From Macrostomum lignano (Eukaryota), in assembly GCA_002269645.1 (NCBI GenBank), contig NIVC01000099.1, forward strand, positions 434,001-498,000: a stretch of 64,000 bases of DNA, written 5' to 3'. Below the pieces are notes generated by a model, which saw only the letters and a list, made by a program, of their open reading frames with translations, made no database searches and had not been told where the DNA came from. Made by a program: the position numbers and the translations under genes. Within the stretch, counting starts at the first letter, position 1. Each line of letters starts with the position of its first letter. Shown here piece after piece: positions 17,894 to 64,000 of the stretch.

Positions 17894-17901
17894 AAACTCA
17901 C

Positions 17902-23069: not shown

Positions 23070-23645
23070 AGTGCATAGTCATTTTGTCTGCCACCCTTTT
23101 GTCTACTGGCAGACAAAATGACTTTTTAATAATAAGTAGCAAAACAGGTTTTATAAATGGCTAGAAGTAATCTATAGTTTATTTTTAGTAATTAGAATTT
23201 GCAAGCAATTTTTCAGATTAAGAATTATATATAATTGTTGTATTTTTTATTTTGTTTATCGTAATGTTTCTGGAATTACATTTATTCTTATATAGGCTTT
23301 AAATCTACATAGGAGTGAGATTTATAATTTGTGCCATGCGTGTAACCAGAAATCAGTCTTTTAAGCATTTTTTCAATCATATTTTTATGGACAACTACAT
23401 TGTCATTATTTGCCATCATGTTGTTAGACCTAATATTTAGAAATTACTTGTTTAAGTCATTATTACTAAGAAATGATCTTGATATCTTCATCACTGTTAT
23501 CTTATAATCACTATCTCAAATAATGACAACATACTTACACTTAATTAAAACTTTATTATTTGTGGCAGATGAAATGACTATTTCGTATTCTTGCAGACAA
23601 AAAGGTGGCAGACAAACTGGCAGCAGACAAAATTACTGTCAACCT
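23070..23645. mobile_element. Degenerate inverted-repeat element
   Basis: Left AGTCATTTTGTCTGCCACC..TTTTGTCT is mirrored by right AGACAAAAAGGTGGCAGACAAA...GCAGACAAAATTACTGTC. Confidence 0.5.
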
Positions 23646-23750
23646 GAAAGCTTCATAAGCCAATTAGAGCTGTGGCCACCTTAAACATGCACCTAAGGCT
23701 AAGGCCTAGCCCTAGCTTTATACATGTACATATATGTGATATATATTAAC

Positions 23751-33827: not shown

Positions 33828-36800
33828 GTGGCCCAAATTCTGAGGAGAAAGACCAAGTGCTAGAACCAGTAACTGTAAATGTAAACTGTATGTCAACTAA
33901 TGTTATGTATGTTTCTACTAAATTCTTTGGCAAAAATATTCCATGTCTAATAGATACTGGTGCTTCAGCTACAATCATAAATTCAAGTTTAATTAACAAG
34001 TCAAAGTACCAAGTAAGAGCTTCTAATGTCAAATTACAAGCTGCAAATGGTAAACAGCTTTCTGTATTAGGAGAAACGACAATCAAATTTAATTTTGGAG
34101 ATATTGTCTGTCAGCAAGAAGTCATCATCTGCAAAGACATTCAGCATTCAGTAATCCTAGGATGTGATTTCTTTACTAATTTCAATGTATCTATTCATCC
34201 AGCAGAAGGCATGATCACATTTAATAATCAGAACAGAAGTTTCCCAACTAGAAAAACAACAGAAGTTCAGAGAAGCTGCAAGATCATCGCAACTGAAACT
34301 GTCCAGCTAAAACCAGGACAAGCAGCAACTATTTCCATTGCACCAAAGATGTCAACTCAGTCAATGGCACCAGGACTAGTCCAGTCGAACAAAAGAATCC
34401 CAGGACTCTTGGCTGCTAGAACTGTTGATTTAATAAAGAATGAAGGCATGTACATCAATATTATCAACTCGAACTCGAACAGAGACCTGACCATCAAGAA
34501 AGGTTCGTTAGTTGGTTCCTTCACCCCTCTAGATTGCAGAGGAGAGACCTGCATTGTCGTCGAAGAAGTAGCAGATAAATCCGAGTCTGGTAGCAAAGAA
34601 GAGACTGAAGATGCAGAGAAAACATTCAAAATTTCTCCAGATCTCACAGAAGCTGAAAGGAAATCTGTTAGTGACATCCTAGATGAGTACAGCGACATAT
34701 TTTCAAGAGATGGCAAGCTTGGTCGAACTGCTTTACTGAAACACTCGATAAATACTGGCACAGCAATGCCTGTCAGAGAGACATTAAGGAGAGCAGCACT
34801 GCCAACCATCGAGGAGCAGGAGAAGTTGATTCAACAAATGCTTGATGATAAAGTCATTCAGCCGTCAACATCACCGTGGGCTGCACCTGTCATTCTGGTG
34901 AAAAAGAAGGACGGAAGCTCTCGTTTTTGCATTGATTTTAGAAAACTGAATGCTGCAACTAAACCTGATGCATTCCCTGTGCCAAGAATCGACGACATGC
35001 TAGATGCTTTAGCAGATAACGTTTACTTTTCTGCATTAGACTTGCAAGCAGGCTACTGGCAAGTAGAAATGGAAGAAAAAGATCGCGAGAAAACCGCATT
35101 TGTCTGTCACCATGGACTCTTTGAATTTAATGTTATGCCCTTTGGCTTACGCAATGCACCATCAACTTTTCAAAGACTCATCCAGATGGTTCTTCAAGGC
35201 TTAAATTGGGAAGCATGTCTAGCTTACATCGATGATGTTATTGTTATGGGTAAAACGTTAGATATTCACAACGAGAGACTCAAACAAGTTTTTGGACGAT
35301 TAAGAGCAGCAAATCTTCGTCTTAAACCTAGTAAGTGCAATTTTGCTGCCAAGTCGCTGAAGATTTTAGGTCATGTGATAACGCCTCAAGGAATAGCAGT
35401 AGACGATGAGAAGATTGATTCTATTAAGAGATGGCCAACACCAACGAATCAGAAAGATGTCAGAAGTTTCCTAGGCCTGTCATCATATTACAGACGATTC
35501 ATTAAAGACTATTCAAAGATTTCCGAGCCCTTAAGAGTGCTGACAACTGATAAGAAATTCATCTGGACCGACGAGGCAGAGCAAAGTTTCATTCGCCTTA
35601 AGTCCGCCTTAACATCGGCACCTATCTTAGCATTGCCAATAATGACAGGCGAAGACTCCGAATTTGTGCTAGATACTGATGCTAGCGACATTGCCATAGG
35701 ATGCGTTTTATCACAGCAACAGAATGGCGAAGAAAAAGTGATTGCCTATGGAAGTCGAGTGCTCAGCACCGCCGAAAAGAATTACTGCGTGACTCGCCGA
35801 GAACTACTAGCAGTAGTCTAGTTTGTTAAAAAGTTTAGGTCATATCTAGCGCCAAAGAAGTTTACAATCAGGGTAGATCACCAGGCGTTGACCTGCTTAC
35901 TACAGTTCAAAGAACCTAATGGCCAATTAGCTCGATGGATCGAATCTCCTCAGGAGTTCAACTTCGAGATACTCTACCGGCCAGGTAAACTGCATTCCAA
36001 CGCAGACGCTTTATCACGCAGGTGTACAAGACCGTGCGAATCTTGTCGACCTAGCAAAGCAATTTCAGATGCAGAATGTCAAACTGACGAAGATCAGACT
36101 GTCGCAGCTGTTTTGTCTAGAAGGAAACAAACGCTGGTTCCAAGGAAGTCCGAAAGTGAGGACGAAAGTGAGTTAATAGACGAAGCTGAGCAGAGTGAGA
36201 CTGAAGAGGAGCCGAGTATGCGTGCACTGCAGTTACAGGATCCAGGAATTGGACCAGTATTTCGGAAGCTAGCCAATGGAAAAACAGCGTTTGAAACTGG
36301 AGAACGAGATAGAATGTCACCAGAAAGTTTGAGCCTTATGTCCAAAGCCGACGAATTGTGCTTCGTTAACGGCGTAATGCATTATTTATTCAAGACTAAG
36401 CCTGTTCTAGTACTGCCGCAGTGTAAACGAGAAAGCTTCATTAAAGAAATTCATGAGTTAGGTCACTTTAGTGTCGAAAAGACAAGAACATCTGTCAGGA
36501 AGCGTGCCTACTGGCCAAAATTAGCCCTGGATGTTGAACTATTTGTCAGGTCATGCATTCCGTGTCAAAGATCTAGGCCAACATCAATCACTCGAGGCCC
36601 TCTGCAGCCGATAGCTACAGGATTTCCTATGCATCGCATTGGAATCGACATAGTAAAAGTGGCTACCTCGAGGCAAGGCAATAATCGATTGCTTACGATA
36701 GTCGACTACTTCACTAAGTGGGCCGAATTAATACCAATTCCTGACGAAAGGGCGAACACCGTTGCGAAGGCAATATTCGACGTGTGGATATCGAGATGGG

Positions 36801-37576
36801 GAGCACCGCATATCATTCACTCCGATCGGGGTAGCAACGTAGACGGCAAAGTCATCAAGAGTCTCTGCAAAATATTTGACATTCAAAAAACTCGCACTAC
36901 CTATTTCCATCCTCAGTGTGACGGTCTTGTGGAAAGATTCCATAGAACATTGCACAGCGTGCTACGATGCTACCTGCAAACGGTGGAACCCGAAGACTGG
37001 CAAGATGTTATTCCTTATTGCCTTCTGGCCTATCGAAGCACCGTCCACAGCAGTACCGGCTTTACGCCTCATTTCCTGATGACTGGGCGAGAAGTTACGC
37101 TTCCTCTTGATATTGTATATCGACTGGCTGAGCCGGCCAGCACTGCTGTAACTTTCGCCAGCTCCACGAAAGAGTCTCTATTGAAAGCATTTGAAGCTGT
37201 GAGAGAGTCTGTTGATTTAGCACAGCGCCGCCAGAAGAGATATTATGATGGAAAGTCCAAGAAAAAAGGGTTCAAGGTTGGATCATTGGTCTGGATTTTT
37301 ATCCCACCATCTGTCCTACGGCAGCGTGAACCTCGCTGGTCTGTCAAACACCACGCTCCGTGGACTGGACCTTTCCGCGTCACCCGGAAGTTGACCAGCC
37401 TGACCTATGAAGTGAAGTCGATTGACGAACATCAGAAAGTAAAGATCGTAAATGTAGAGAAGATGAAACGCTACATTGAGCCGCGTAGACAAGAAGGGTT
37501 GTGGCAAGACGAAGAGGCTGACGAAAGAGAACAAGAACCAGAAGAAAGCGTCGAAGAGGAATGGGTCATTGTGTAG
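33743..37576 (+). pseudogene. pol: pol of element B with in-frame TAG at 35819-35821 (RNase H)
   Basis: LIDTGA, YIDD, DTDASD, then ELLAVV*FVKKFRSYL continuing in frame into RNase H and integrase (HHCC, DDE, GPF). Confidence 0.92.
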
Positions 37577-40500
37577 AACCGACTGTCATTAAGAAACAGA
37601 TCTCGCGCGTAATTGCACCAATCACGACTTTGTGGCCACTTCATGGTAAATTCCTGGAACTAATCATGGTTAATCTACTAATAATTATTGGATTTGATCC
37701 ATTGGACTAACTAGAACTATCATCTGATTATGATGGAATACTGGTAACTGGACTTACTAATTACTGTCTGATGGACTACTGGTAACTGGACTGACTAATT
37801 ACTGCTTGATGGACTGACGGATAACTACCTAAGGGACTGATGGACTACTACACTTAACTACCGTGCAATAATTGTCCTGGAGACAGACTGTGAGCATTTT
37901 AACACTGATATTAATGAAGCCATGTTAAACGCTATTAGATTCGCAACTTGATTCAAATACTGACTGGTTGTTTCCTAATAATGCAATTTTCGTATTTGGT
38001 AAATAGTAAATTTTGCGTGTTATTACACTGTTCCTATTGTTCAATTGCAGGGTGCTCGATTGCTTGAATTTTTGCTTCGCGCATTTGTGAAATCGTTTTA
38101 TCCGTCGAACTTTTAGTCGTACATATTTTTTAAAAAAAAAATACAAATATTTTTTTCAAAAAAAATACAAATATTTTTTTTGTTATTGGATTTTCAATTT
38201 TCCCCAATATTGTGACAAAACATTAAAAAAAATATCTGTTGCATATGCTTTCGCTATCGAATTGTTGTCGCAGAGGTGTACTGTAATTTTCGATCGTTCA
38301 CGTCTTTCTGCAACTGTAATGGTCTGAAACTGTTATTTCGTTCGAAACATTCATCATTTTATCGTTCGTAATTTAGGCATAATTTAACTCGTTGACAAGT
38401 ACCGTAATAATTTGCTTCTCTTAAACATTTCATCTGTCAGTGTTAGAATTTTGTCGTCTGTGCATTCGTTTCGGCGTTCTGTTGCATACGTTCGAATTGA
38501 TGTTCTCGTGACAGTTTCGATTTGTTGTGCTATCATGCATAATCATCAGCTTTAATACATTTTTTGAAGTGGTTTAAAGTTTTTCCTGCTCTTTTTGCCG
38601 GCATTCTTGTTGTGCAAATCGATGTCAGAATCAACGCTCGCGCCGTGTCCAATGTACCTCTGCCTTCCGTGCGGTCGTGCTGGTGGCTCTGTCAGTAAGA
38701 TTATAACTGTATTAGTATTGCAAGCATGACGACCTTGCGTCTCTAGGAATTTTTTTCTTCCTTCAGGGTACACTCGGTATGCATGTTTCCTCAACTTTTA
38801 ATGTAAAATTATCACTGTTTTTCTGTACCCACTTTCATACCGTACGAGTATTAGCAACAAAGCACATCGAAATTTTCAATGTTCTACTGACGCAGATTTC
38901 TGAAGTAGTATGTATCGAGTTTTCTTAACGGTAACAATGAGGGCATTGTTTTTCTGGAGGGGGGGTAATGTAAAGTATTTTATGTATCAATTAAATATCC
39001 GCACTTTTTATGATGTGTCCGGCATTCTTAAATATTATTGTGTTGTTGTTTAGTTAGTAGTTATTCAGTAGTGAGTTCTATTTCCGCGATTCTTACTGTA
39101 CGTACTTTACTACTATTGTTTTACTGTATGCTAATTCCTATCGTATTTCAAACGCGAATGCGCTGTGTTTTGGTGTTGTGCTTCTGTGCGCCGTAGTAGT
39201 TGTAGTCGTAGGGTTGCATAGCCGTTCCAAAGTTCCAGTCGATCCAGTTTTAATTCAATAATAGATATAGACATTATTTAGAATATATATTAATTACTTT
39301 GACTACATAGATTGTTCAGATACGAATACAAATATATAAATGAAAATGATTTAAGGCGCATTGCACCCACAAGCCAAGAACGCATTCGTTCATTCATCTG
39401 TCATCACAACAAAAATAAGGCGATTCTTTGAATTATTGGACTTCAAGAAACTTAGTTTACAAAAGCTGAAATTAAAAAGACCGCCAAAACGTGACAAAAC
39501 ATATTAACGAGGATTTACGATTAGGTATAGTAGATGACAGTAGACCAAGCCTTAAAACTTCATGAGTTCGTCAACCAAATGTTTTCTGCATCAGCTCTGA
39601 CTTCGTTCGTTACTGGCCTTCAGTGAGATGAAGCTTTTGGACATTCAACAGGTGACTATGGACAAACGCTGTTGCAGGGGACATCAAATTTAGTTCCAAA
39701 GTGGCAGTGATGTATTAGAGCGGTGCTTTCGCTGTCGGATCCCTCTATTGGACCGGCAATTAGTCGAAAATGCCATCTCTCTATGTCTCACTTGACCACA
39801 AGGGGTTAATATGGGATAAATAGGGATCTTATTTCAACTTACGAGTAAGGCTCCAGCTGGAAGTGCGAATTGTACCACGCAGATGCACCAGATGTACGTA
39901 AACTGTTCGAGAGCTGCGCTTTCGCTTTTAGGTTAATAAGTTGAACTTAAGGCACCTAAAATTCACTTAAAATTACTGTTGCAATCTGCGTGTAGGTAGT
40001 ATTTTCTGTCTAGTGCACAGTAGTAGCTATATCATGTTTTTTGCGCAAATTTTACTTGGTTTTAAAAAGTTATTTTTTATCTCAAGTTTTTTTGCATGGC
40101 AGTGAATTCAATGTACTTTTTTTAAAGAAAGACCATTTCTGTGTAAAAGTTCGGTTTAGTTCAAAGTTTCATAAACTAAACAACTTGTCCAATAAAACTT
40201 TTATGCATTGCTTGTATAGGTAGCAGGCAGCAGCGATCGAGTTGGAAAAACCTTACGCTCGTAGAGAGTATTTTAAGACAGAGAGAGTCTATTGTAGCGC
40301 TTAAAGGAAAACTCGACCTTCTGGCAAAATTGTTAACTATACATGTATCTCGACGGTCAAGGAAGGCTGACGACTCGGTTCTTTGTTTGAGATGGTTTGC
40401 AACAAAAAGTTAACCTGTATTCTCAACTCTCATGGGCCTTTCGATCGTTGCTCCATATTTTGCGCAGCAGAAGAAATTGCCAGGGGTTGTCAGAAATTGT

Positions 40501-43135: not shown

Positions 43136-45069
43136 CTGGAGTGATGTAGGGATTGGCGAATACTGGAGTTGGTGCAGTGCAACTTCTGAGGTGCTGGATG
43201 AATCCTTGTACATATGCATTAAAGCTTCCGAGATGGGAAATGGCCAACCCCCAACAGAGAGCCCAGTGGTCAAGACTTAGCATTGCTCATTTTCTTAAAC
43301 TTAAGGTGCAGTCAGTCAGCGCTCTCGGCTAACTTTGAAATCTACTCCAACGCCCGTCGCCGAGAGGCTTTCGAGCTTTTCCAATTGCTTTTCCAGGCGC
43401 AATAAGTGCAGGGATCTGCAGTTTTTGCACCTGCTGAACTTTGCCCTGACTCTGATTGACTGTTATTCGGACCAGACTCTCTCATCTTCGACCACACACG
43501 CCTCCTGAGCGGCGGAAACCCTACGTTCTGAGCGGTCCGTCGGTTGTCCAGGGCCAGCGGAATGGGTGCTGGCCGCTTTCAGCTGCGTCTTTTGGCATCG
43601 ACACGGACTCACCTGGGCCGTCTCTCAGAGCGCCCTGCAGAAGGCCAAACAGAGCCCCAGCTTCAGAGTGTCTGCATGAGTGTCTCTTCCAATAGCGTCT
43701 TCCAGAGTACACCGCAGAAGCCTCAGAGTCACCAGCCACCCCCTCAGCCTCAGCTATGGAGAATTCTGTTAAATATTCCCTCTCGTGACACCGCTCTAAA
43801 ATATAGAAAAGTAAGCCCGATTTTCTCATAGACAGCGTACTTAAATTAGCAATTTTTTTCACTACAGCTGGCTTCACGGCTCTCACGAAGAAACTCGCAG
43901 CGCGATCGAAGCAAGCACGCCACGGAAACCATAAGACGGCGTTGCTTTATAACTCGCCTGCACTTGAAAAACACGTTATGAATTCAAACCTTTTTTGGTA
44001 CGCCTTATTTTGCCAGCCATATTGATCGATTGAAGCTCGAAAGCTGCAAGCGTTCCGTTGTTCATGCCACGACAGAGCTTGGAATTCGACCCATGAGAGA
44101 GGGTGTGGAAGAGGGAACGATAATTTAAGGAACACCACTAAGCTATAAGACGGGGTTCTAAGGCATAAATTCTGCCAAGTTTAGCATCAACTAGAGCGAA
44201 GGTTTTACTTTGGCTTAGGTTTTACCCATGGGGATCGATATGTCTACCCAACCTATTCCAATGCTCAGCATCGACAACCTAAGAATTTGAATGCTACAAA
44301 CAATCTCTCTGACTGTTTTAGCTCTCTTAGAGCGCCAAAATTTAGTTTTTAAATTAAGTCTACTTCGTGCACAGACTCTCTGTATGCAAGTCTTAACTTA
44401 TCAAGAAGCAACTTGGTTTTAATAGGGGATTAAGACCATCATCGTTTGCAGCTTTAGTGCAATCCTGAAGCGAGACTGAGGCATATGGCGCATAGGCCTC
44501 TCGAAGCCATTATTTCAAATTCAAATTGTCCAACAGAATTGAGCAGAAAGGTACGTCGTATAAACGTAGCCTTTAAAGTAGCTTTTAAAAGAAAAATAAC
44601 TTCTTTTTCTTGTTTCATGACAACAATAGCGGCCTCTTCCAGTCTTTAAAAAGTTCCAGCCCAATCCTCCTGGCAGCACTATCCTGCTCAGTTTGAGGAG
44701 CATTGCTACCCCCTCTTCCAGTCAGACAGTCAGAAGTTGCAGCAAGTCAAGCAAAACGTAGCTACCTGCAGTCCTTGATCACTGCCAATAATTACAGGCA
44801 CTAACTGCCGTGGATGCGCGCTCATTGTCTTGTCAATGTCATCGACACGGCGCCTTGCGTTACTTTTTAAGCGCGAAAGAGGATTCAAGAGCGCTCATCT
44901 GTTCATCTGCCTGGAATACCAAGCATTGTAATAACTGCTCCAAGTCTCCGTGTCCGTATCCGACATTACACGAGCTATTTTACTGTTTCAGTCAGGTATG
45001 TCCGCTATTAAGAAACAATGGAAAAGGCAGGCGCTACATTAGATGGAGAACTAACCGGTATTTTAGGTA

Positions 45070-45850
45070 CTGTTGGGTGCTGTTAGTGTTGTTGGGTGCT
45101 GTTGGGTGCTGTTGGGTGGTGTTGGGTGCTGTTGGTGTTGTTGGGTGCTGTTGGGTGCTGTTGGGTGGTGTTGGGTGCTGTTGGTGTTGTTGGGTGCTGT
45201 TGGGTGCTGTTGGTGTTGTTGGGTGCTGTTGGGTGCTGTTGGGTGCTGTTGGGTGCTGTTGGTGTTGTTGGGTGCTGTTGGGTGCTGTTGGTGTTGTTGG
45301 GTGCTGTTGGGTGCTGTTGGGTGCTGTTGGGTGCTGTTGTGTGCTGTTGGTGTTGTTGGGTGCTGTTGGGTGTTGTTGGGTGCTGTTGGGTGCTGTTGGG
45401 TGCTGTTGGGTGCTGTTGTGCTGTTGGGTGCTGTTGTGTGCTGTTGGTGTTGTTGGGTGCTGTTGTGCTGTTGGGTGCTGTTGTTGGTGTTGTTGGGCGC
45501 TGTTGGTGTTGTTGGGTGCTGTTGGGTGGTGTTGGGTGCTGTTGGTTCTGTTGAGTGATGTGGTGCTTTTGGGTGCTGCTATGTGCTGTTGGGTGCTGTT
45601 ATGTGCTGTTGGGTGCTGTTATGTGCTGTTGGGTGCTGTTATGTGCTGTTGGGTGCTGTTGGGTGCTGTTGGGTGCTGTTGGGTGCTGTTGGTTCTGTTG
45701 AGTGATTTGGTGCTTTTGGGTGCTGTTATGTGCTGTTGGGTGCTGTTATGTGCTGTTGGGTGCTGTTATGTGCTGTTGGGTGCTGTTATGTGCTGTTGGG
45801 TGCTGTTGGGTGCTGTTGGGTGCTGTTATGTGCTGTTGGGTGCTGTTATG
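45070..45850. repeat. 10-bp repeat (GGTGCTGTTG)n with variants
   Basis: Directly visible, opsin intron 3. Confidence 0.95.
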
Positions 45851-46468
45851 TGCTTCTAGGGTGCTTTTGGATGCTAATTGATTCAATAAGCCAAGTTTAC
45901 ATAGCATTGAAACGAGTATATTCGCCCAATAGATGTACTAGAAGGACTTTTAAAGCACGATTGAGATACCAAGTAAAGAAGCTCCTGTCTGCTGGTTGGT
46001 GCTCTATTATTTATGTAAGAAGTCCCCGTTAATGGTTGCTCTGTAAATTGGGCTGGAAATTGTCCGTCAATCTGCACAGATATGTGGTGGTAAAACTCTC
46101 AAGAGCTGCCTGAATTTCTCACTAACCAAATTCCCTTTGTTCAACTGCTCTTAGCGTTGGGTTTGCCTACCTTAAACTGAAGTAGGAAGCTGCTCAGGGA
46201 TCTCCATACTTCCAGCAGTATATCCTCAGGGCAGCTCACCCGATTTCCCACTTTGAATGCAAGATATTTTGCTTGATAACATGACTTGTTTCTTGCGCAA
46301 ACGAATCCACAATTATGGGTGTTTTGCTCTTTATTTTAAATAAATTCTTTCTTAATTCTAATTTCAAAATTATATGTATCTAATTTTTTTCCACAATTTT
46401 TGTTATTCACAGTTAATGAATTATTTATTTTAAATTACCATCCACGCAAAATGCCTTACCTTTCATGC

Positions 46469-46710
46469 GAAATGTCCTACCCGCCAAGTGAAATGTCCTA
46501 CCCGCCAGGCGAAATGTCCTACCCGCCAGGCGAAATGTCCTACCCGCCAGGAGAAATGTCCTACCCGCCAGGCGAAATGTCCTACCCGCCAGGCGAAATG
46601 TCCTACCCGCCAGGCGAAATGTCCTACCCGCCAGGCGAAATGTCCTACCCGCCAGGCGAAATGTCCTACCCGCCAGGTAAAATGTCCTACCCGCCAGGCG
46701 AAATGTCCTG
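46469..46710. repeat. 21-bp minisatellite (GAAATGTCCTACCCGCCAGGC)n
   Basis: About 11 units. Confidence 0.95.
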
Positions 46711-47328
46711 TACCCCCCAAAGCACATTTGTTCTAGGGCAAATTATCTTTGGGCAAAATGTCAGTAATTCTGCATAATGAGCTCCGGTTTTCATTACGTC
46801 AAGCAACAAAATTAGGGAAGTTCGGGTAATTTTTTAAATCCGATCGCGTCTGAAAACCGACTTTGCTGAAATTTTGCTGACGAAGTGAAATGCGCGGGCG
46901 ATGCAGCCACCCAAAGTCAGCAGCACGCAAACTAGATAAAGGCATCATGCTGACATTTATAATTTTTTGAGTCTAACATCTCTCTGTCACGGTCGTCAAC
47001 AGAGTTGAGATGAAATTGAAATTTCTGTAGCGATCGCCGTGCAGCAAGCAAGCTGCTGGACAGTCGGCATGCAGCCATCCGGCTTCTGTAATTCTACACT
47101 GACTGGCTGCTCACGCTCCCGAAATTTTGCTTTAATTACACAGAGCTATTTGCTTGCGTTTTTGCTTGAAGGCAGCTCTGCGTTAATAGCTACTCGAATC
47201 GCGTGAGCAATGTTTTGGCCTTGCAGTCTTCTTGGCTGCGACAGGAATAAATAATTTTTTGTGAGACATCTTAGCAGAGAGAAAGTAACTGTGTATACGT
47301 AGTTATAAACAATGATTTCTAAAATAGA

Positions 47329-48475
<1,147 letters not shown>

Positions 48476-48545
48476 TGGGCAAGGGTGACCCCAACACAGC
48501 CGGTCGGGCGGCCAGAGCCAGAGGCTGGCAGACGTCGCAGCTCAC

Positions 48546-48639
48546 CGATGATGGCGAGCACGTGAATGGCGAACTTCCTGTCCCTCCTGGCCTGGCTGGA
48601 GCTCGCGGCCAGCAGCCCGGAGCTGCGGTGCCGTCGGAT
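48546..48639 (-). CDS. Divergent opsin, exon 3 (ICL3 and start of TM6)
   Basis: TTGCAG|ATC...: IRRHRSSGLLAASSSQARRDRKFAIHVLAII-G|GTGAG. 94 nt, phase 0 in and phase 1 out, matching the neighbouring exons. Confidence 0.85.
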
Positions 48640-48994
48640 CTGCAATGAATTTCCGGATTGTCATCTGTTGGCTTCGGCTTGCTGACAGTTTTACGAGTAA
48701 AGTACATCTCTGACAGTCAGCCCAGTGCATCCAAAGCGGATTAGCATTTAACGCAGAATCCATGCTTGTAGCAGCTTTGGCTTCTATCTAGTCCGGAAAT
48801 TAATTGTTTCACCCCACGGAAAGTGACTCGTGCTTTGCCAGTGCAATGCATTTACAGAGGCAATTTTCGTATTCACTAAGTCACTATTTCAAATTATTGC
48901 AAAACTCCGAATAACAAATTTTTGTATGGTGAATCTGGAATCCTAACTTCAACTGACCATCGTTCTCATCCACTCAACGGAATTAAAATTTTAT

Positions 48995-49775
48995 CAGGTC
49001 ATCCTGACACAGCATCCATCATCTAGACCTCACCTGACACAGAATCCATCATCTAGATCTCACCTGACACAGCATCCGGCATCTCGATTTCACCTGACAC
49101 AGCATCCGGCATCTCGATCTCACCTGACACAGCATCCTGCATCAAGATCTCACCTGACACAGCATCCTGCATCAAGATCTCACCTGACACAGCATCCGGC
49201 ATCCAGATCTCACCTGACACAGCATCCTGCATCTCGATCTCACCTGACACAGCATCCGGCATCCAGATCTCACCTGACACAGCATCCGGCATCTCGATTT
49301 CACCTGACACAGCATCCGGCATCTCGATCTCACGATCTCACCTGACACAGCATCCTGCATCTCGATCTCACCTGACACAGCATCCGGCATCCAGATCTCA
49401 CCTGACACAGCATCCGGCATCTCGATTTCACCTGACACAGCATCCGGCATCTCGATCTCACGATCTCACCTGACACAGCATCCTGCATCTCGATCTCACC
49501 TGACACAGCATCCGGCATTCAAATCTCACCTGACACAGCATCCGTCATCCAGATCTCACCTGACACTGCATCCGGCATCCAGATCTCACCTGACACAGCA
49601 TCCGGCATCCAGATCTCACCTGACACTGCATCCGGCATCCAGATCTCACCTGACACTGCATCCGGCATCCAGATCTCACCTGACACAGCATCCGTCATCC
49701 AGATCTCACCTGACACAGCATCCTGCATCCAGATCTCACCTGACACAGCATCCGGCATCTCGATCTCACCTGACA
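48995..49775. repeat. 30-bp minisatellite (GATCTCACCTGACACAGCATCCGGCATC..)n
   Basis: About 26 units in opsin intron 2. Confidence 0.95.
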
Positions 49776-50302
49776 CAGCTGCTGGTCTTTTTCTGAGGCA
49801 ATCTTATCTCTTTTTAAAGAAACTCACCCTAACTGACGCACCGTCTATCCCAGGTTTGCCATCTTGAGTTTAGAACTAACAGATTTAAAAGCGATAAAAA
49901 TCAGTTTTCAGAACTAATTTGAACCCTCCCTAAAAACGCAGCCAAAGCAACTCAGACCAGGCATAGCTAAAAGCAGACAGACAGAAATGAGGTTCCCATG
50001 ATGAATCCTTAGCACTATTAAAGAAAGTATTCTTCCAGGCAGCTAGAATAGGCGGATAGATAAGCCAGAGGCTTATCTGTCACGGACTGTGCCTATATTA
50101 ATGCCATCAATAATATATTTATTCACTAGGTGCGTCTCCGGCAAAAGCCCGACTCAAATTCCGCCTAGTAGAAAAGGAGCTCTGCTAGCTGCGAATGTTC
50201 CTGGTTCGAGCATCAGCTGGTGACTGAAATTATTTAATCATAGGAGTATTAAACTTAGGCGCAAGACATTTGACTCTCTACTAACGTATTGCAATGGGAG
50301 AT

Positions 50303-50427
50303 TATACATACGGTACTAGAGGTAAACAATAAGCAAAATCACGAGTGGCGTAGCCACGATCACTCGTGGCTAAACGATAGCCACGAGTGATCTTTGCTTA
50401 TTGTTTAACGATAGTACCGTATGTATA
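50303..50427. mobile_element. Palindromic MITE-like element
   Basis: Terminal TATACATACGGTACTA..TAAACAATAAGCAAA is mirrored at the right end, with possible TA TSD. Inner perfect 15-bp stem at 50358-50372/50378-50392. Confidence 0.7.
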
Positions 50428-52084
50428 GACTTATTGTCACTATCGTTTAGCATACTCGACTAGAAGCATTGTAATTATACTTTTACCCAGACGCAATGAA
50501 AAAATATTTTGGCCATTATTCCACAGTTTTGATGTGTACCATAGACATTTGGATTGAAAAAATCCATCGCTCAGTATTTTTGTTAATAAATACAGAACAA
50601 CAAGAAGTGAATGAACAAAAAGGAAAAATCATTAAAACTAAAGTACCAGCTACACGAAAAGAGTTAATAATAAATGTCACAGCTAGTGCAGTTTATCAGT
50701 TTGTAGTCGAAATTTGACAATGTAAAAATCAATTTGTCACCCAAAGTGAAACATGCACAGTTCTCAAAGCCGCAGTTTCCAAAGATGCTCGACACTTTAG
50801 CCTGATGATTTGGCACTGCAAAAGGAGTTGGTCTATGTTGAATGTTTTCTATGAAAGAGGAATACTGGTGCTCAAGTATAGTTGCCGAACTTACCATTTG
50901 AAAGATGCACGACTTGGTTAAGTTGGCATGCGACTGATGAGCTTCGTCTGATGAGCTTCTTTGGTACCGCAGTATCCAAGCTGGGATTCTTTGGGACTGT
51001 CGGCTGCTCGACTGAATCGATTCACCGCTTTCAGGCATCGTTTATAGCCGTCGAGGCGTTGAAGACTGCATGGTCGCGTTTTCTTCCTAGGTAGTGCCGC
51101 ACGGTTCGTTCAGTCGTCGACAGGAAGATTTTTTCAATTAATAAGCGCGGCTGTTTGACGAGATGCACTATAGCCATAGTTATGGTCAACTAAGCCACAC
51201 AACTCAGTCGTCTATGGGTAAAACAACTCTTAAAACAGCCAATTGAAGCATGATAAAAAGTGTGGAATAATGACAGCGACAAAAGTGTGGAATAATGGCC
51301 GCAAAAGTGTGGAATAATGACTGAGCGCTGAGTGAAAGTATAAATACAATGCACTTGTATAGTATGCAACTTCGTTGAATAATGGCCATAGACACTCGTG
51401 CGCTACGCGCACTCGAGTTTTGGCCATTATTCAACTCAGTTGCATACTATACAATCTACCATTGTTTAACGCTGAAGCGTTGTTTAACGCCGATTGTTTA
51501 ACGATGTCTCAGCGAATCAGAAACGTCCTAGACTGCGCAGGTTTTGGCCATAGACATCGACAACGACATCGACACTGCCATAGGAAGCGCTATGGAGCGA
51601 TTCCAAGTGTACCATAGACTATCGAGTGAATATAGAGTAGAGAAAAGCAGGGGACTGTGGCTTGATATAAGCTTGCTTGCTTTAACATCAACCACTAAAA
51701 TGCATCTAATAAATTGGAAAAATCTGCCTACTGATTCTCTTAACGGAGTGTCTTCAAGCGAAATGGATTTCCTTTCTCTGCTGAGTGCAACCGACCACGC
51801 TGGCGACGCTGACCTAGCGGAGTTCACCCGTTTCTTAGAAGATCCTACGATGGATGACCATTCGGTTCTGGATACAACCCCTACCGGATATATCAGATGA
51901 CGCTCCTCTCACGGGAGAAGATATGTGATTTGATAAATGGTGATTTGTCATAACAATTAGCTAATTGCTTTTAATGCTTCACTACACACATTTTAAAATG
52001 CATTCTATGTTTTTTATATGCTTGGTTTTGTTAAAGTGTGTGCTTAAATGGGTATTCTGTTTCTCTGTACTCAATTTGGTGACA

Positions 52085-52900
52085 TGTGTATGTAAAAATG
52101 CATATTCTACGTTTTTCTATGCTCTCAATTTGTTTAAATGTATGTAAAAATGCGTGTTCTACGTTTTTCTATGCTCTCAATTTGTTTAAATGTATGTAAA
52201 AATGCGTATTCTACGTTTTTCTATGCTCTCAATTTGTTTAAATGTATGTAAAAATGCGTGTTCTACGTTTTTCTATGCTCTCAATTTGTTTAAATGTATG
52301 TAAAAATGCGTGTTCTACGTTTTTCTATGCTCTCAATTTGTTTAAATGTATGTAAAAATGCATATTCTACGTTTTTCTATGCTCTCAATTTGTTTAAATG
52401 TATGTAAAAATGCATATTCTACGTTTTTCTATGCTCTCAATTTGTTTAAATGTATGTAAAAATGCGTATTCTACGTTTTTCTATGCTCTCAATTTGTTTA
52501 AATGTATGTAAAAATGCGTGTTCTACGTTTTTCTATGCTCTCAATTTGTTTAAATGTATGTAAAAATGCGTGTTCTACGTTTTTCTATGCTCTCAATTTG
52601 TTTAAATGTACGTAAAAATGCATATTCTACGTTTTTCTATGCTCTCAATTTGTTTAAATGTATGTAAAAATGCGTGTTCTACGTTTTTCTATGCTCTCAA
52701 TTTGTTTAAATGTATGTAAAAATGCGTGTTCTACGTTTTTCTATGCTCTCAATTTGTTTAAATGTATGTAAAAATGCGTGTTCTACGTTTTTCTATGCTC
52801 TCAATTTGTTTAAATGTATGTAAAAATGCGTGTTCTACGTTTTTCTATGCTCTCAATTTGTTTAAATGTATGTAAAAATGCGTATTCTACGTTTTTCCAC
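52085..52900. repeat. 52-bp minisatellite (TGTATGTAAAAATGCGTGTTCTACGTTTTTCTATGCTCTCAATTTGTTTAAA)n
   Basis: About 15 units. Confidence 0.96.
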
Positions 52901-53389
52901 GCTCAATTTGTTAACGCACAGTTTGTGTTAAAATGCGTATTTAGTTCATCTATGCTTTTTGTTTTGTTCATCCATGTATTTGTTAGCGCATGTGTTAAAA
53001 TGCGTAGCTTTCCTATGATTTTCTATTCCTAATGTTTTTCATGCATTGAACGTTTAGTACAATACATATAAAATAAATTGTCTATGGCAAAATTTTCAAT
53101 CATCGTTAAACAATCAATCTTTGACTGAAGCGTTGTTAGTGTGGTAAACCATAGTAACAATAAATCCTTGGAAATACTGACTTTGCCTAGCATGGTTTCA
53201 GCTCAAATGCTCAGAGCCAATCTTTTACTAATGAGTAAGTACACCGTCTAGGCATCTTAATCCCATTATGCAATCCTGGACTAGCTATATGCATCACTAG
53301 AATCAAAGCGTCAAGAACTCAAGAACGACTTGAGACTGTCAGTCACACTAACTTTCGCATTTAATCCACAACTGATCTTCACAAAACTC

Positions 53390-53800
53390 CACAGACATGC
53401 TCCACTGACATCCTGCACTGATATCCTCCACTGACATCCTCCACTGGCATCCTCCACTGACATCCTCCACTGACATCCTCGACAGACATCCTTCACTGAC
53501 ATCCTCCACTGACATCCTCCACTGACATCCTCGACAGACATCCTTCACTGACATCCTCCACTGACATCCTCCACTGACATCCTCGACAGACATCCTTCAC
53601 TGACATCCTCCACTGACATCCTCCACTGATATCCTCCACTGATATCCTCCACTGACATCCTTAACTGACATCCTCCATTCTCCACTGACATCCTCCATTC
53701 TCCACTGACATCCTCCATTCTCCACTGACACCCTCCAATGACATTTTCCATTCTCCACTGACATCCTCCAATGACATTTTCCATTCTCCGCTGACATTCT
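53390..53800. repeat. 13-bp minisatellite (ACTGACATCCTCC)n
   Basis: Directly visible, next to the opsin exon 2 donor. Confidence 0.92.
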
Positions 53801-60399: not shown

Positions 60400-61484
60400 G
60401 TGAAAAACTATAGTGCTAGTATTTTTTCTATTAGAATAACAACGTAAAAAATTAATATTCATACATATCCTTTAGGTAATTTTTGACTGTCTTAGTTAAA
60501 AAAAATATTTGTTTGTCACGAAGCGTTCATAATTCAAAATTTTCATAATTCAACCTCCAGTCATGCGACGACGACGACGCACGTGCGTGCACACATCACC
60601 CTTGGCGGCCTTGGCCTACCTACCTAGCGCTAGCCGCTAGCATAGCGCACACTCGCGTAAATTAGCCCCTGAGCAAGCCTGGAAGCAAGACTTGCGACTT
60701 GTGTAGCGATTGGATAGCTGTAATTTTGGTTAACTGCATATTATTCTTGAGCTTTTCGCTTGCACTTGCAACAAAAAATCTAAACACAAACAGTTTTTTG
60801 GGAAGCAGTTAGAAGTTTGCGACTAAATTAGAGGCCTTTATTTTCAGTTTTGCCTTTTCACTGAATAGGCCTAGTCAAAATAAAGCATAAGGCTAGGCCT
60901 AATTTTGGTAAGTCTAATTGCAATTTAATTTATAACCATAGGCCTATCTTCAGTTTGTAACAACCAATTTAATTATAGGCCTATTGATTGCAGAATCCCA
61001 ACCTGGAAACCATGTTTCCAAATTTTCAAGCCTGCTGCCTGGTATTTAGGTATTACTATTATTAGGCCTAGTGGAAATTATGCCTGGGCCCTATATGTAG
61101 CAGGGCCTAATTAATAATAAATGTAGGCTTAGTCTGGTATATGCAAATTTTGATTTGATAAAGAGTAAAGTCAAAGATAGTAAAATAATTAGGCCTTTTG
61201 ATTAAGCTAGAGCCTGTAGGAGCCTATTCACCCTACTGTTTGATTATTTCATGATAATGATTAAAACATGTTAGGGTCCAAGCCAATGGCCATGCAATTA
61301 ATAATGGATTCTAATTTAGAGTCAAAGTTAGGCCTAAACTAGGCCTAGGGCCTAATATATATATAAGCTAAAGTTTAAAAAATCAAATGTAATAGGCCTA
61401 ATAAAATAAAGCAAAAGTTTTATACTACTGAATGATTCAAATAAGCCTAGGTAATTTGATATTTATAATTTGTAATATGAATTA

Positions 61485-62779
61485 CAGGGTATGGCATAAA
61501 AATTTGACCCTTCAGAAAAGAAATTTATTAACATGATTTATTATCAGTTATATTGCACTTATATTATAATGATAAAAGTGAATTCATAATAAAGCTTTGA
61601 CTGTCTAATTATTAATTCTTAATGTAGCCTCCCCTAGCTTCAAGCACAGCCTCAACATAGCAGCAAAAAGTATGGCAAGTCTGTCAAACAAAATCTTTAT
61701 CCAAATTGTCCCAGCTTAGCCAAATAGAGTATTTCAAAGCTGCGACACATGCATGGCTGACAGCCTACACCTCCTACATATGCGCCTAGATCCCAAAGTC
61801 CAGCAGGTTCAGATCTGGCAAGGAAGGTGGCCACATGTCCTTTGGCCACATGCAGCTGAGTGCCTCTTGCAGGTGATCCTAAGTGCTAGAGCACCTTCTT
61901 GCTAAAAGATATACCTACCATTAGGGTACTGTTGGTTGATCCAGGGGATGACCACAAAGTGACCAAGAGTCTGATATATGAGTCTGCATTGAGTTCTTGC
62001 TTTCCTCTATGAAGACAATGGGGCACTTCTTCCCATCTGATGTTAGCACCCCAAGCACCATGACCTTGGCTGGATGCTTGGTGGCCAAGTTGAAGCAAAC
62101 TTCTGGCACCATCTGCTTCTTCTTCAGATGCGATAAGTACCTACTGTTGCAGCAATTGAGCTATTGATTCACTATGAATAGATTCTTATCTGAGAAAATG
62201 CACACTATGCCAGCATTTTTGGTATCCTTCAGGAAGGCAAGCAGCTTCTTGCACCTGTCTAGCCTTGTCTGCTGAGTCTCTGGCATCAGTCGGGGCCAAA
62301 TCTCAACAGCGCCGCTGGCCATGCCAAGGTCATTGTGAATGAGCCTTTGTATGCTATGCTCAGACATCTCCATCTTGTCAGCCATCTTCCACATGGATTG
62401 CTAGGGATTCTTGGACACTGACTGTCAGATAGCCTCAACTGTCTCATCTATTCTCTGCAAATAAGGTTGGCCACTTCCCTCTTGTCTCTCAAGACTTAGT
62501 CCAGCACTGAGGTGGCACCTAGTGTCCTTCACCATGGTCCTAGACACTCCTAGAGCTGCCACAATTTCAAATATAGAGTAGTCTGCATGGACCTACTCTG
62601 ACACAAGCTCACATTTGAGTCTCTCCATTGAAGTTGGCAATAGTTATGAACTTTAGCTGGTAGCAAGGGCTTTTTCATACCTTTATGCAACCAAGGATTA
62701 AATATTGTGCACATTGGTTGCATAATCAACAACTAATGGAACATTTTCATAGGGGGTCAGATTTTTATGCCGCACCCTG
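61485..62779 (-). mobile_element. Tc1/mariner (DDD, maT-like) transposon, full length (1295 bp), heavily mutated
   Basis: ~28-bp TIRs CAGGGT..GGCATAAAAAT.TGACCC with TA on the left. Transposase pseudogene at 61612-62628 has HTH, IFSD, KHPAKVMV, PDLNLLDF and GGYI motifs with 9 in-frame stops and several indels. Confidence 0.88.
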
Positions 62780-64000
62780 TGAGGGCTAACAATTTGATAT
62801 TATTGTTAGGGGCTTATATTGTTAATAGGGCCTGTTTATATTTAGTCCCTATTTATAAATTATATTCTATATAAACCAAAGTAATAGTAGGCCTACTAGG
62901 CCTATTAGACCTATTAGTAACTTAGTAGGCTTATTAAAAATATAATTTATAAGGCTAGACCCTAATAATAAACTCAGTATAATTTTAGTAGCACAAAATA
63001 GATTAGTATAACTGAAGATAAGCACTAATTTTAAAGAAAAGGTCCCATTAGGCCCAAGCTATATCTAATAGCTTAGATATTGGTTGGCCCTAGGCCTTCT
63101 AAATATTAGTCCAACCAACAAAAGGAATCTCTTTTTGTCATTTTTGATAAGGCCTTCATATTTACATAGGCTAGGATAGAATTGTATTAGAATAGGCCTA
63201 GTTATTTTTGCTAGGCATAGGCCTAATAGTAATGAAACTTTGATGTATAACTACTTTGAGTATAAGTCAACTTAAGTTAAAATTTGCTTTTATTTATCTA
63301 ATCTTTACAACTTAATGTACTATTATAGATTCAAACTTAGCTAAACTAATAAATTCTATATTATTTTTAGCTAAATAAATGTACTCATTTCCTAGTACAA
63401 ATTTTTAAGTTGTTAGTTTATAAAGATATTGATATATTCCAACATAGTAGGTTTAACTCAATTAGAACAATAATAACTCTATTATTGTTACTTTTATGCT
63501 CTTATGCAATTAGTTATACCACTTAAATTGAGCTAAATGTTCTATTTTTATTTTGCTATGGGCTAAAATGCAGTAATTTCTATAGATCAGCTTTATTGCA
63601 ATGATATAAATTGCAAATTCTACTTTGAAAGTAGCATTCACTACTCAAGTAGAAAATAAATTTTGCCATAGCTAAAGATGTAGTTCAAAGCAAATAAAGT
63701 TTTTATGAAAGTCTTATATAAGGTTCTTCTTTGAAATAGGACAGACAGTGTCATTTAAAATTGACTATATTTCCTAGGTTGATAGCCTCAGAGCTGCATT
63801 CATATGAAACTGAGTTAATGCACATCTTATCTCAATTTTATCTCAACTAACTTAAAAAAACATTTGCCTCGCAAGTAGGTACATTTTTGTCACACTTTTA
63901 TACTTTATCAACTTCAAAATGTAACTTTGTTCATATGATTGGAAACAATATTCTCAAAGATAAGTCTAAACAAAGTATGCTAACAATTACTACACTTAGT

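What the first reader, a model, noticed from the sequence alone, without database searches (positions are those of the whole stretch)
60800..64000. RIP-like CpG plus CAG->TAG hypermutation footprint in an animal transposon domain
Seen: the mariner transposase carries 7 TAG stops (62593, 62401, 62161, 61902, 61786, 61774, 61765) and 2 TGA stops (62425, 61684), and I saw no internal TAA. One TAG replaces the invariant Trp of LDFxIW (ATC TGG->ATC TAG, which is CCAG->CTAG on the other strand). Another replaces Gln in FQQDGAPA, where Pro also reads CTA. By manual count, 62781-63240 has about 47 TAG+CTA, 3 CAG+CTG and 0 CpG. A similarly AT-rich but young region (37921-38400) has about 8, 11 and 22. 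TAGGCCTA, the expected product of CAGGCCTG, recurs. Inference: the ancestral codons come from family motifs, and most Arg-like positions read as CpG transitions. Established: CpG decay alone yields TpG/CpA, not a TAG excess. CpA->TpA is the fungal RIP signature, CHG methylation is plant-like, and mCAG is a DNMT3B preference. This may record a repeat-targeted non-CpG methylation or mutation system that I do not know of in flatworms.
Basis: partly seen in the sequence, partly recalled or inferred. Interest (0 to 1): 0.82.

Follow-up and report, generated by a model that had tools for sequence, protein, structure and literature searches.

The report
Decayed mariner in AT-rich flatworm DNA
A dead mariner-type jumping gene in AT-rich, CpG-free flatworm DNA lost its CpGs in the ordinary way; the TAG/CTA surplus around it comes mostly from base composition and from an unexplained 8-letter palindrome (TAGGCCTA) shared by Macrostomum genomes, with only a weak hint of extra C-to-T change at CAG.

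Summary
61485-62779 (minus strand) is a dead DD37D (maT-type) Tc1/mariner copy with 27-nt inverted ends, three frameshifts and in-frame stops TAG x8, TGA x2, TAA x0. It lies in AT-rich, CpG-free DNA of a Macrostomum-like flatworm.

CpG decay is real and strong: 47-67% of inferable CpG sites mutated against about 15% of other C sites. It looks like ordinary 5mC deamination, not RIP.

The flank TAG/CTA excess does not record CAG decay. It reflects AT-richness (T/C 2-3) plus the palindrome TAGGCCTA: 12 copies in 1.13 kb with unrelated flanks. That word is also about 200-fold over-represented in AT-rich DNA of M. lignano. C>T changes cannot make its GGCC core, and CAGGCCTG-type precursors are rare.

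Inside the mariner there is a real but unproven TAG surplus. CAG is not depleted and CTG is unaffected.

Nothing shows that repeats are targeted. Verdict: mostly ordinary decay. There is a possible CAG bias worth testing on more copies, and an unexplained genus-wide octamer.

The parts
60800..61483 (.). Left flank: AT-rich (33% GC), CpG-poor DNA (1 CpG). It carries 10 AGGCCT sites (8 of them TAGGCCTA) between 60832 and 61394. Its left edge abuts CpG-containing sequence that looks like the 3' LTR of a degenerate LTR retrotransposon (polypurine run near 60330); that reading is inferred.
61483..61484 (.). TA target-site duplicate, left copy. The right copy at 62780-62781 reads TG.
   Evidence: read directly
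61484..62780 (-). Dead maT-type (DD37D clade) Tc1/mariner element, about 1.3 kb. GC 44%, CpG o/e 0.11, TpG and CpA o/e 1.40 and 1.43, TpA o/e 0.77.
61484..61510 (.). Terminal inverted repeat at the transposase 3' end. It differs from the other arm at 3 positions: GCG>ATG and C>T.
   Evidence: same TIR start (ACAGGGTGCG) in the intact relative L010
62754..62780 (.). Terminal inverted repeat at the transposase 5' end.
61612..62628 (-). Transposase pseudogene. It has three frameshifts (about 61996-61999, 61955-61961 and 61878-61893). In-frame stops: TAG at 62595-62593, 62403-62401, 62163-62161, 61904-61902, 61881-61879, 61788-61786, 61776-61774 and 61767-61765; TGA at 62427-62425 and 61686-61684. 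The second catalytic Asp reads Glu (GAA).
62781..63245 (.). Right flank, inner part: 31% GC, 0-1 CpG, 6 AGGCCT sites (4 of them TAGGCCTA). It includes a 9-bp x3.3 tandem of TAGGCCTAT at 62888-62917, inside a roughly 100-bp imperfect palindrome at 62853-62952.
63246..64000 (.). Right flank, outer part: 26% GC, CpG-free, no AGGCCT. TAG/CAG is 42/7 against a T/C ratio of 2.85. It runs off the window.

Best explanation
The domain is AT-rich, CpG-poor non-coding DNA of a Macrostomum-like flatworm. A maT-type mariner inserted into it at a TA long ago, and an LTR retrotransposon inserted later at the left edge.

The mariner died and decayed by ordinary routes:
- Fast CpG>TpG/CpA transitions. Mechanism inferred: deamination of 5-methylcytosine, since the genus keeps DNMT1 and DNMT3.
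- Slower AT-biased substitutions in all contexts, including transversions.
- Three small indels.

TAG dominates among the stops partly because the ancestor used G-ending codons (CAG Gln, TGG Trp, few CAA, AAA or GAA).

The TAG/CTA surplus of the flanks is not a mutational footprint of CAG. It is what 26-33% GC DNA gives (T/C 2-3), plus many copies of one 8-bp palindrome, TAGGCCTA. That word is characteristic of AT-rich DNA across the genus. Its origin is unknown; my best guess is a protein-binding word kept or spread locally.

Shown: the element's identity, the CpG decay, the composition, and the word's enrichment in two species. Inferred: methylation as the cause of CpG loss, and the host-DNA (non-repeat) status of the flanks.
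For: Organism. The intact Ty3 pol at 27008-31123 is 61% identical to M. lignano BOX15_Mlig005277g1 and 73% identical to a Logan-assembly protein.

Element.
- TIRs; 35-38% identity over the full length to DDE_3 transposases.
- DD37D spacing in 11 of 13 relatives.
- Same TIR start as the intact 1321-bp relative L010.

CpG decay.
- CpG o/e 0.11 with TpG/CpA o/e 1.40/1.43.
- At 110 conserved codons, C>T hit 12/18 CpG sites against 10/93 other C sites and 6/110 for T>C.
- With two DNA outgroups the figures are 14/30 against 27/145.
- The literature reports DNMT1 and DNMT3 and low 5mC in M. lignano (PMC9246332, PMC11292947).

Ordinary ageing. Nine transversions among 33 conserved-codon changes, and three frameshifts.

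Flanks.
- Other AT-rich CpG-free DNA in the window (22251-23750) has TAG/CAG 2.24, TAA/CAA 2.20, TAT/CAT 2.46 and TAC/CAC 2.14.
- In 16.6 kb of such DNA from 7 M. lignano loci, TAG/CAG is 2.57 against a T/C ratio of 2.51.
- After removing TAGG/CAGG, the domain's flanks give 81/18 = 4.5, the same as TAC/CAC at 4.5.

The word.
- 16 AGGCCT in 1.13 kb against 0.19/kb in 51.5 kb of young DNA.
- Precursors are too rare.
- Flanks of the copies are no more alike than random windows: 0.329 against 0.326.
- M. lignano has 22 TAGGCCTA against 0.11 expected, and TAGGCC is the top 6-mer.

No CAG effect elsewhere.
- Tandem-array variants: 2/16 against 30/112.
- Seven copies of an M. lignano LTR retrotransposon: 1.37% against 1.2-1.9%.
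Against: The element itself holds more TAG/CTA than context-free decay predicts.
- 40 observed, against 20.6±4.2 simulated from L001 and 20.7±4.5 simulated from L010. TAA (14) and TAC (16) are below the simulations.
- 8 TAG stops, against 2.3-4.3 expected.
- Site-level C>T at CAG is 7/16, as high as at CpG, against 15-18% in every other non-CpG context (p=0.013).

The two negative controls (tandem arrays and the M. lignano LTR copies) also lack CpG hypermutability. They were probably never methylated, so they cannot exclude a CAG effect that is tied to methylation.

The domain's flanks have a higher TAG/CAG (5.4) than other AT-rich DNA (2.2-2.6).

I have no mechanism for the TAGGCCTA enrichment.
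Confidence: 0.6

Rival explanations
1. Locus-bound non-CpG methylation. Where the flatworm's DNMT3 methylates CpG, it also methylates CpA with a CAG preference (DNMT3B-like, asymmetric). Deamination then turns CAG into TAG at a rate close to that of CpG. This would not be repeat-targeted or RIP-like. It would be a by-product of de novo methylation at this locus.
For: - C>T at CAG is 7/16, against 14/30 at CpG and 20/129 in all other non-CpG contexts.
- At conserved codons it is 4/12 against 6/81 (p=0.02).
- TAG+CTA is 40 against 20.7±4.5 simulated.
- 8 TAG stops, with P=0.0025-0.05.
- CTG is unaffected (0/8 and 2/13), as expected for asymmetric CpA methylation.
- The domain's flanks have the highest TAG/CAG of all AT-rich DNA examined.
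Against: - Numbers are small, and the tests reuse the stop codons that prompted the idea. Without them the count is 5/14 (p=0.07), or 4/13 (p=0.23).
- CAG against CAH alone gives p=0.07-0.38.
- At conserved Leu codons, CTG>CTA is 0/6.
- A 5-fold acceleration is needed to reach TAG=40, and that predicts CAG of about 32. Observed CAG is 48, the value expected with no acceleration.
- The ancestor's composition is known only from relatives 35-38% identical in protein.
- From my own knowledge, appreciable non-CpG methylation has so far been regarded as essentially a vertebrate and plant trait.
Confidence: 0.22
2. One reading: a repeat-targeted, RIP-like hypermutation system that converts CpG and CAG/CTG across a transposon domain, with TAGGCCTA as the end product of CAGGCCTG.
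For: - CpG-free domain with high TpA/ApT in the flanks: 1.14-1.27.
- TAG-rich stops.
- Recurrent TAGGCCTA.
Against: - RIP indices are negative in the only identifiable repeat.
- Transversions and indels are present.
- The flanks are not repeats, and their state differs from the element's.
- GGCC is enriched 5-fold, which C>T changes cannot produce.
- The octamer is genus-wide in AT-rich DNA.
- Young TEs in the window have 100%-identical LTRs and CpG o/e of about 1.
- M. lignano TE copies show neither a CpG nor a CAG excess.
- CTG is unaffected.
Confidence: 0.05
3. The element's TAG surplus is simply inherited. The family's active ancestor was already rich in out-of-frame TAG/CTA and in CAG/CTG, so no context bias is needed.
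For: - TAG+CAG in the element (88) exceeds every simulation (68-78), which points to an ancestor with more YAG than L010 or L001.
- Only 10 TA sites could be traced to agreeing outgroup states. Four of them are already TA in both outgroups, but only one of those four is of the TAG/CTA class.
Against: - Both available intact relatives have only 9-11 TAG+CTA per kb.
- The 8 in-frame TAGs cannot be ancestral.
- Retained conserved Leu codons include no CTA.
Confidence: 0.13

Closest known systems
maT (DD37D) clade of the Tc1/mariner superfamily
   Same: - About 1.3 kb long, with 27-nt TIRs starting (A)CAGGG and a TA target.
- A single transposase of about 340 aa with N-terminal HTH and a DDE_3 core.
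- FQQDGAPAH and PDLNPLD motifs with 37 residues between the second and third catalytic Asp in relatives.
   Different: - This copy is dead: 10 stops, 3 frameshifts, and the second Asp reads Glu.
- Its nearest protein among 1.8 billion representatives is only 38.5% identical.
- No second copy was available.
CpG decay of methylated transposons in animals (5mC deamination, as in vertebrate Alu/L1)
   Same: - Near-total CpG loss with matching TpG/CpA gain.
- Arg CGN>TGN/CAN scars.
- A CpG site rate 3-6 times that of other C sites.
   Different: - The host is a flatworm in which genome-wide methylation patterns have not been published (PMC9246332).
- Neighbouring young TEs and sampled M. lignano TE copies show no CpG hypermutability. 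Methylation, if it is the cause, is local or old, not a general TE mark.
Fungal repeat-induced point mutation (RIP)
   Same: - C>T/G>A changes dominate.
- Stop codons are created.
- The flanks are AT-rich with high TpA/ApT.
   Different: - The preferred target here is CpG, not CpA.
- The element's RIP indices are negative.
- Transversions and indels are present.
- No duplicate partner is seen.
- Neither RID/Masc1-type nor any other DNMT genes could be inventoried here.
DNMT3-type non-CpG methylation (mCAG by DNMT3B, mCAC by DNMT3A in mammals; my own knowledge)
   Same: - Asymmetric CpA bias with CAG highest (7/16).
- CTG partner unaffected.
- Co-occurs with CpG decay.
   Different: This is a sequence footprint only, from 16 sites. 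There are no methylation data. CAG is not depleted as the model predicts.
Plant CMT3 CHG (CWG) methylation
   Same: CAG is involved.
   Different: CHG methylation is symmetric. Here CTG cytosines mutate at the background rate (0/8 and 2/13).
Homotypic clusters of short protein-binding words in AT-rich DNA, e.g. the 12 Su(Hw) sites of the gypsy insulator or the Ruby motif upstream of C. elegans 21U-RNA genes (my own knowledge; analogy for TAGGCCTA only)
   Same: A bare 8-mer repeated every 10-200 bp in AT-rich spacers with no other similarity. It occurs in local clusters and is conserved as a word across species.
   Different: No binding protein, transcript or function is known. The word is a perfect palindrome. 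The analogy is untested.

Membership tests
Tc1/mariner, maT (DD37D) clade | Short terminal inverted repeats flanked by a TA target duplication | tested here: met
   27-nt arms, 89% complementary. TA on the left (61483-61484). The right copy reads TG, one substitution away.
Tc1/mariner, maT (DD37D) clade | DDE_3-type transposase homology over the full length | tested here: met
   tblastn 5e-52 to P0001. blastp 38.5% identity, 4e-79, to P0080. P0001 and P0080 hit PF13358. The decayed translation itself does not reach any Pfam threshold.
Tc1/mariner, maT (DD37D) clade | Catalytic D, D, D with 37 residues between the second and third | tested here: inconclusive
   The spacing is 37 in 11 of 13 closest relatives. 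In the window the first and third Asp are kept and the second reads Glu (GAA). A frameshift lies inside the interval, so the spacing cannot be counted exactly.
RIP (repeat-induced point mutation) | TpA/ApT above 0.89 and (CpA+TpG)/(ApC+GpT) below 1.03 in the mutated repeat | tested here: not met
   Element: 0.74 and 1.86. Flanks: 1.14/1.52 on the left and 1.27/1.02 on the right. The thresholds are recalled from the Neurospora literature.
RIP (repeat-induced point mutation) | CpA is the preferred target, and changes are almost only C>T/G>A | tested here: not met
   CpG 12/18 against CpA 7/32. Nine transversions among 33 conserved-codon changes, plus three indels.
RIP (repeat-induced point mutation) | Acts on duplicated sequence; needs a RID/Masc-type methyltransferase | not testable with these tools
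   There is no second copy in the 64-kb window. The source genome is not in the searchable collections.
5mC-driven CpG decay | CpG depletion with reciprocal TpG/CpA excess, and a site rate well above that of other C sites | tested here: met
   CpG o/e 0.11 with TpG/CpA o/e 1.40/1.43. Site rates are 67% against 11% and 47% against 19%.
5mC-driven CpG decay | The host has DNMT1/DNMT3 and the locus is methylated | not testable with these tools
   Literature only: DNMT1 and DNMT3 are retained and 5mC is low in M. lignano (PMC9246332, PMC11292947). There are no methylation data for this locus or species.
Symmetric CHG/CWG methylation footprint | Both CAG and CTG cytosines hypermutable | tested here: not met
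   CTG 0/8 and 2/13, against CAG 4/12 and 7/16.
DNMT3-type CpA (CAG) methylation footprint | C>T at CAG above CAA/CAC/CAT and above the background of non-CpG sites | tested here: inconclusive
   7/16 against 4/27 for CAH (p=0.068) and against 20/129 for all other non-CpG sites (p=0.013); 4/12 against 3/20 (p=0.38). Excluding stop-making sites: 5/14 (p=0.07). CAG is not depleted.

The most novel reading that the evidence does not exclude
In macrostomid flatworms, loci that lose CpG through methylation may also suffer DNMT3-type methylation of CAG. This would leave a CAG>TAG footprint about as strong as CpG decay (7/16 against 14/30 sites in this mariner). It would be the first mutational evidence of germline non-CpG methylation in Platyhelminthes.

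Separately, the genus-wide palindrome TAGGCCTA may mark a sequence-specific system (a binding protein or a repair bias) that shapes AT-rich DNA and perhaps TE insertion sites.
Probability: 0.2. Interest if true: 0.65.

Novelty: already known. Interest (0 to 1): 0.35.

Why it matters
If the CAG signal were real, it would show that an invertebrate DNMT3 methylates non-CpG sites in the germline strongly enough to shape TE decay. M. lignano would be a good system for testing this, because RNAi and transgenesis exist there and no methylome is published.

As it stands, the finding mainly shows two things. A striking trinucleotide skew can arise from base composition plus one over-represented word. 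And comparing AT-rich non-coding DNA with young TE DNA overstates a mutational signature.

The by-product may be more useful than the original claim. TAGGCCTA is an 8-bp palindrome enriched 100-200-fold in AT-rich DNA of two Macrostomum species, and it clusters next to TE insertions.

Tried and rejected
1. Building a family consensus at DNA level was not possible.
   - The window holds no second copy.
   - A k-mer protein search found only two relatives, at 32-36% identity.
   - A full HMMER search found nothing closer than 38.5%.
   - Exact look-ups of window ORFs found no record, so the source genome is not in the collections.
2. LTR pairs as mutation clocks gave nothing. Both retrotransposons have 100%-identical LTRs.
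3. TAGGCCTA as a decayed satellite was rejected. There is no 9-bp or other periodicity, TRF finds only a 3.3-copy tandem, and the flanks of the copies are unrelated.
4. TAGGCCTA as the end of a MITE was rejected. No shared flanks appear among 48 copies from two species.
5. A context-dependent mutational equilibrium that protects C in GCC/CCT was rejected. Isolated C/G, GC, CC and GCC runs are not enriched relative to controls; only GGCC is.
6. Excision footprints of TA-targeting elements were considered and dropped. The element ends (CAG...CTG) do not give GGCC.
7. The Rfam scan of 59-64 kb gave only a sub-threshold SCARNA8 hit.
8. A literature search for the octamer found only primers.
9. My third protein search added no new M. 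lignano proteins. Cluster members gave the extra loci instead.
Full report
**What is there**

The window is a mosaic of tandem arrays, young LTR retrotransposons and short stretches of AT-rich, CpG-free DNA. An intact Ty3-type pol at 27008-31123 is 61% identical to Macrostomum lignano BOX15_Mlig005277g1 and 73% identical to a protein from a Logan assembly. The source is therefore a macrostomid flatworm, but not M. lignano itself.

The domain 60800-64000 has three parts:
- A left flank at 60800-61483 (33% GC, 1 CpG).
- A 1.3-kb element at 61484-62780 with 27-nt inverted ends.
- A right flank at 62781-64000 (28% GC, 1 CpG).

Left of about 60800 lies CpG-containing sequence that follows integrase remnants and a polypurine run. 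It looks like the 3' LTR of a degenerate retrotransposon (inferred).

**The element**

On the minus strand the element encodes a transposase that aligns end to end with DDE_3 proteins. A search of 1.84 billion representatives with the relative P0001 gave 150 family members. The closest to the window copy is P0080, at 38.5% identity. P0080 sits on a complete 1321-bp element (L010) whose ends begin ACAGGGTGCG, like the window's better-preserved arm.

The window copy needs three frameshifts to follow the family alignment. In that reading it has TAG x8, TGA x2 and no internal TAA. One in-frame TAG (61881-61879) was missed.

The counts for 62781-63240 (47/3/0) and 37921-38400 (8/11/22) are exact. 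TAG at 61788-61786 replaces a Trp that is invariant in 26 relatives. TAG at 61904-61902 replaces the first Gln of FQQDGAP, and its Pro reads CTA. Arg columns read TGC, TGG, CAA, TAT and TGA.

**CpG decay is real and ordinary**

The element has CpG o/e 0.11 with TpG/CpA o/e 1.40/1.43, and a normal TpA o/e of 0.77. I inferred changes in two ways.
- At 110 codons conserved in at least 60% of relatives, C>T hit 12/18 CpG sites, 10/93 other C sites, and T>C hit 6/110.
- Using two DNA outgroups (L010 and L001) and only sites where they agree, the rates are CpG 14/30 and other C sites 27/145.

Nine transversions among 33 conserved-codon changes, together with the three frameshifts, show general ageing rather than a transition-only process. 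Both RIP indices are negative in the element: 0.74 and 1.86. Reviews state that M. lignano keeps DNMT1 and DNMT3 and has low 5mC, and that no free-living flatworm methylome is published (PMC9246332, PMC11292947). Deamination of 5mC is therefore the natural, though inferred, cause.

**The flanks do not record CAG decay**

Their TAG+CTA:CAG+CTG ratio of 136:25 looks extreme against a young, CpG-rich comparator. But T/C is 2.0-2.9 in this DNA. Three comparisons put the ratio in context:
- Another AT-rich CpG-free stretch of the window (22251-23750) has TAG/CAG 2.24, TAA/CAA 2.20, TAT/CAT 2.46 and TAC/CAC 2.14.
- In 16.6 kb of such DNA from seven M. lignano loci, TAG/CAG is 2.57 against a T/C ratio of 2.51.
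- Young DNA is coding TE sequence in which TAG is under-represented and CAG over-represented. It is therefore not a neutral baseline.

What is special in the domain is one word. AGGCCT occurs 16 times, 12 of them as TAGGCCTA, in the 1.13 kb next to the element. That is 14/kb, against 0.19/kb in 51.5 kb of young DNA. Removing TAGG/CAGG leaves 81/18 = 4.5, equal to TAC/CAC.

**TAGGCCTA is not a decay product**

- C>T and G>A changes cannot create GGCC. Yet GGCC is at 20/kb in the 32%-GC core against 3.8/kb in young DNA.
- All 16 possible transition precursors (YRGGCCYR) together occur at 0.21/kb, and CAGGCCTG occurs zero times.
- The copies share nothing beyond the octamer: pairwise flank identity is 0.329 against 0.326 for random windows.
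- There is no periodicity, and only one 3.3-copy 9-bp tandem.
- Runs of isolated C/G, GC, CC and GCC are not enriched; only GGCC is. A general context-protection model therefore fails.

I then fetched seven M. lignano loci (169 kb, GCA_002269645.1) around copies of one LTR retrotransposon.
- In their AT-rich CpG-poor parts, TAGGCCTA occurs 22 times against 0.11 expected.
- All other A-SSSS-T words (A, four G/C bases, T) are near zero there (on the first four loci).
- TAGGCC is the top 6-mer against an order-1 model.
- Again the copies are bare octamers in local clusters without shared flanks.

The word is thus a genus-level property of this kind of DNA.

**A residual signal inside the element**

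TAG+CTA in the coding region is 40. Context-free decay simulated from either intact relative gives 20.6±4.2 or 20.7±4.5. TAA (14) and TAC (16) fall below the simulations. Eight TAG stops compare with 2.3-4.3 expected (P=0.0025-0.05). C>T rates by context, using the two outgroups, are:

| Context | C>T sites |
|---|---|
| CpG | 14/30 |
| CAG | 7/16 |
| CAH | 4/27 |
| CTG | 2/13 |
| CTH | 5/28 |
| CC | 9/61 |

CAG against all other non-CpG contexts gives p=0.013, and CAG against CAH gives p=0.068.

Several points weigh against reading this as a CAG-specific process:
- The sites include the stops that prompted the hypothesis. Without them the count is 5/14 (p=0.07), or 4/13 (p=0.23).
- At conserved codons alone, CAG against CAH is 4/12 against 3/20 (p=0.38).
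- Conserved Leu CTG>CTA is 0/6.
- A 5-fold CAG acceleration, which is what TAG=40 requires, predicts CAG of about 32. Observed CAG is 48, the unaccelerated value.

An ancestor richer in YAG than the two proxies could explain part of the surplus.

**Controls and their limits**

Variants within 12 tandem arrays of the window show C>T at CAG in 2/16 sites against 30/112 elsewhere. Singletons among seven copies of the M. lignano retrotransposon give CAG 1.37%, CAH 1.38%, CTG 1.91% and CpG 1.50%. Neither set shows a CAG effect.

Neither shows CpG hypermutability either. These sequences were probably not methylated, so they cannot exclude a methylation-linked CAG effect. They do argue against any general repeat-targeted mutator. 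The window's two young retrotransposons, with identical LTRs and CpG o/e of about 1, argue the same way.

**Verdict**

- CpG decay is present, and is ordinary rather than RIP-like.
- The flank TAG/CTA excess and TAGGCCTA are not CAG decay.
- A 2-3-fold CAG bias inside the one decayed element is possible but unproven, at a probability of about 0.2.
- There is no evidence for repeat targeting or for symmetric CHG-type marks.

The most interesting loose end is the octamer itself.

Noticed in passing
window 60832-61394, 62889-63219, 21311, 22735; L002 4839; L004 6968-7229; L005 6773-8065; L006 7353-8091; L007 7493-7653, 15485; L009 9024-9292, 16617-16902, 20717-22285: The 8-bp palindrome TAGGCCTA is 100-200-fold over-represented in AT-rich, CpG-poor DNA of both the window's species and M. 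lignano (22 against 0.11 expected in 16.6 kb). It occurs as bare copies in local clusters with unrelated flanks. I found no report of it in the held literature.
   Followed up: partly
L004-L007, L009 (M. lignano); window about 60800: 25 of the 34 M. lignano TAGGCCTA copies lie within 1.5 kb of the ends of the sampled LTR-retrotransposon copies, which is 17% of the flanking DNA. These are independent insertions with different 4-bp target duplications. In the window the cluster also abuts an LTR end and holds the mariner. This could be an insertion preference or a sampling effect, since all loci were drawn around one TE family.
   Followed up: partly
L002, L004-L009 element copies (about 6.57 kb each); window tandem arrays: Seven copies of an M. 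lignano Ty3-type element (96-99.98% identical) show C>T singletons at CpG (1.50%) no more often than at other C sites (0.8-1.9%). The window's tandem arrays behave the same way (7/24 against 32/128). These repeats show no sign of germline CpG methylation, unlike the old mariner.
   Followed up: partly
window 25581-31717 and 31717-39280: Two different LTR retrotransposons sit back to back, each with 100%-identical LTRs. The first carries one 1371-aa pol ORF. The second carries long ORFs interrupted between RNase H and integrase. They are probably very recent insertions.
   Followed up: partly
window 32251-32750: The 5' part of the second, young retrotransposon is itself AT-rich and CpG-free (0 CpG in 500 bp). 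Low CpG and low GC do not always mean old age in this genome.
   Followed up: no
window 23750-25010: A CpG-rich element with long inverted ends (CAGTGTTGGGCACTTCCGTTAC...) and an internal 21-bp x4 repeat splits a stretch of AT-rich CpG-free DNA. It is likely a young non-autonomous DNA transposon.
   Followed up: no
window 62853-62952: A roughly 100-bp imperfect palindrome (74% over 104 nt), centred on the TAGGCCTAC/TAGGCCTAT/TAGACCTAT tandem just right of the mariner.
   Followed up: no
L010 (Logan SRR27492288, 1321 bp) and L001 (JGI 3300042888, 1318 bp): Two complete maT-type elements with intact 342-344-aa transposase ORFs and CpG o/e of about 1, on contigs the size of one element. They may be active copies in unidentified hosts. 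L010 shares its TIR start with the window copy.
   Followed up: no
window 1078-18000, 45066-53800: Unusual density of unrelated tandem arrays: at least 12 arrays of 0.3-1.8 kb with units of 4-52 bp, for example AGAC x441 at 3064-4810. Several are entirely CpG-free because the unit lacks CpG. This produces the window's patchwork of CpG o/e values.
   Followed up: no
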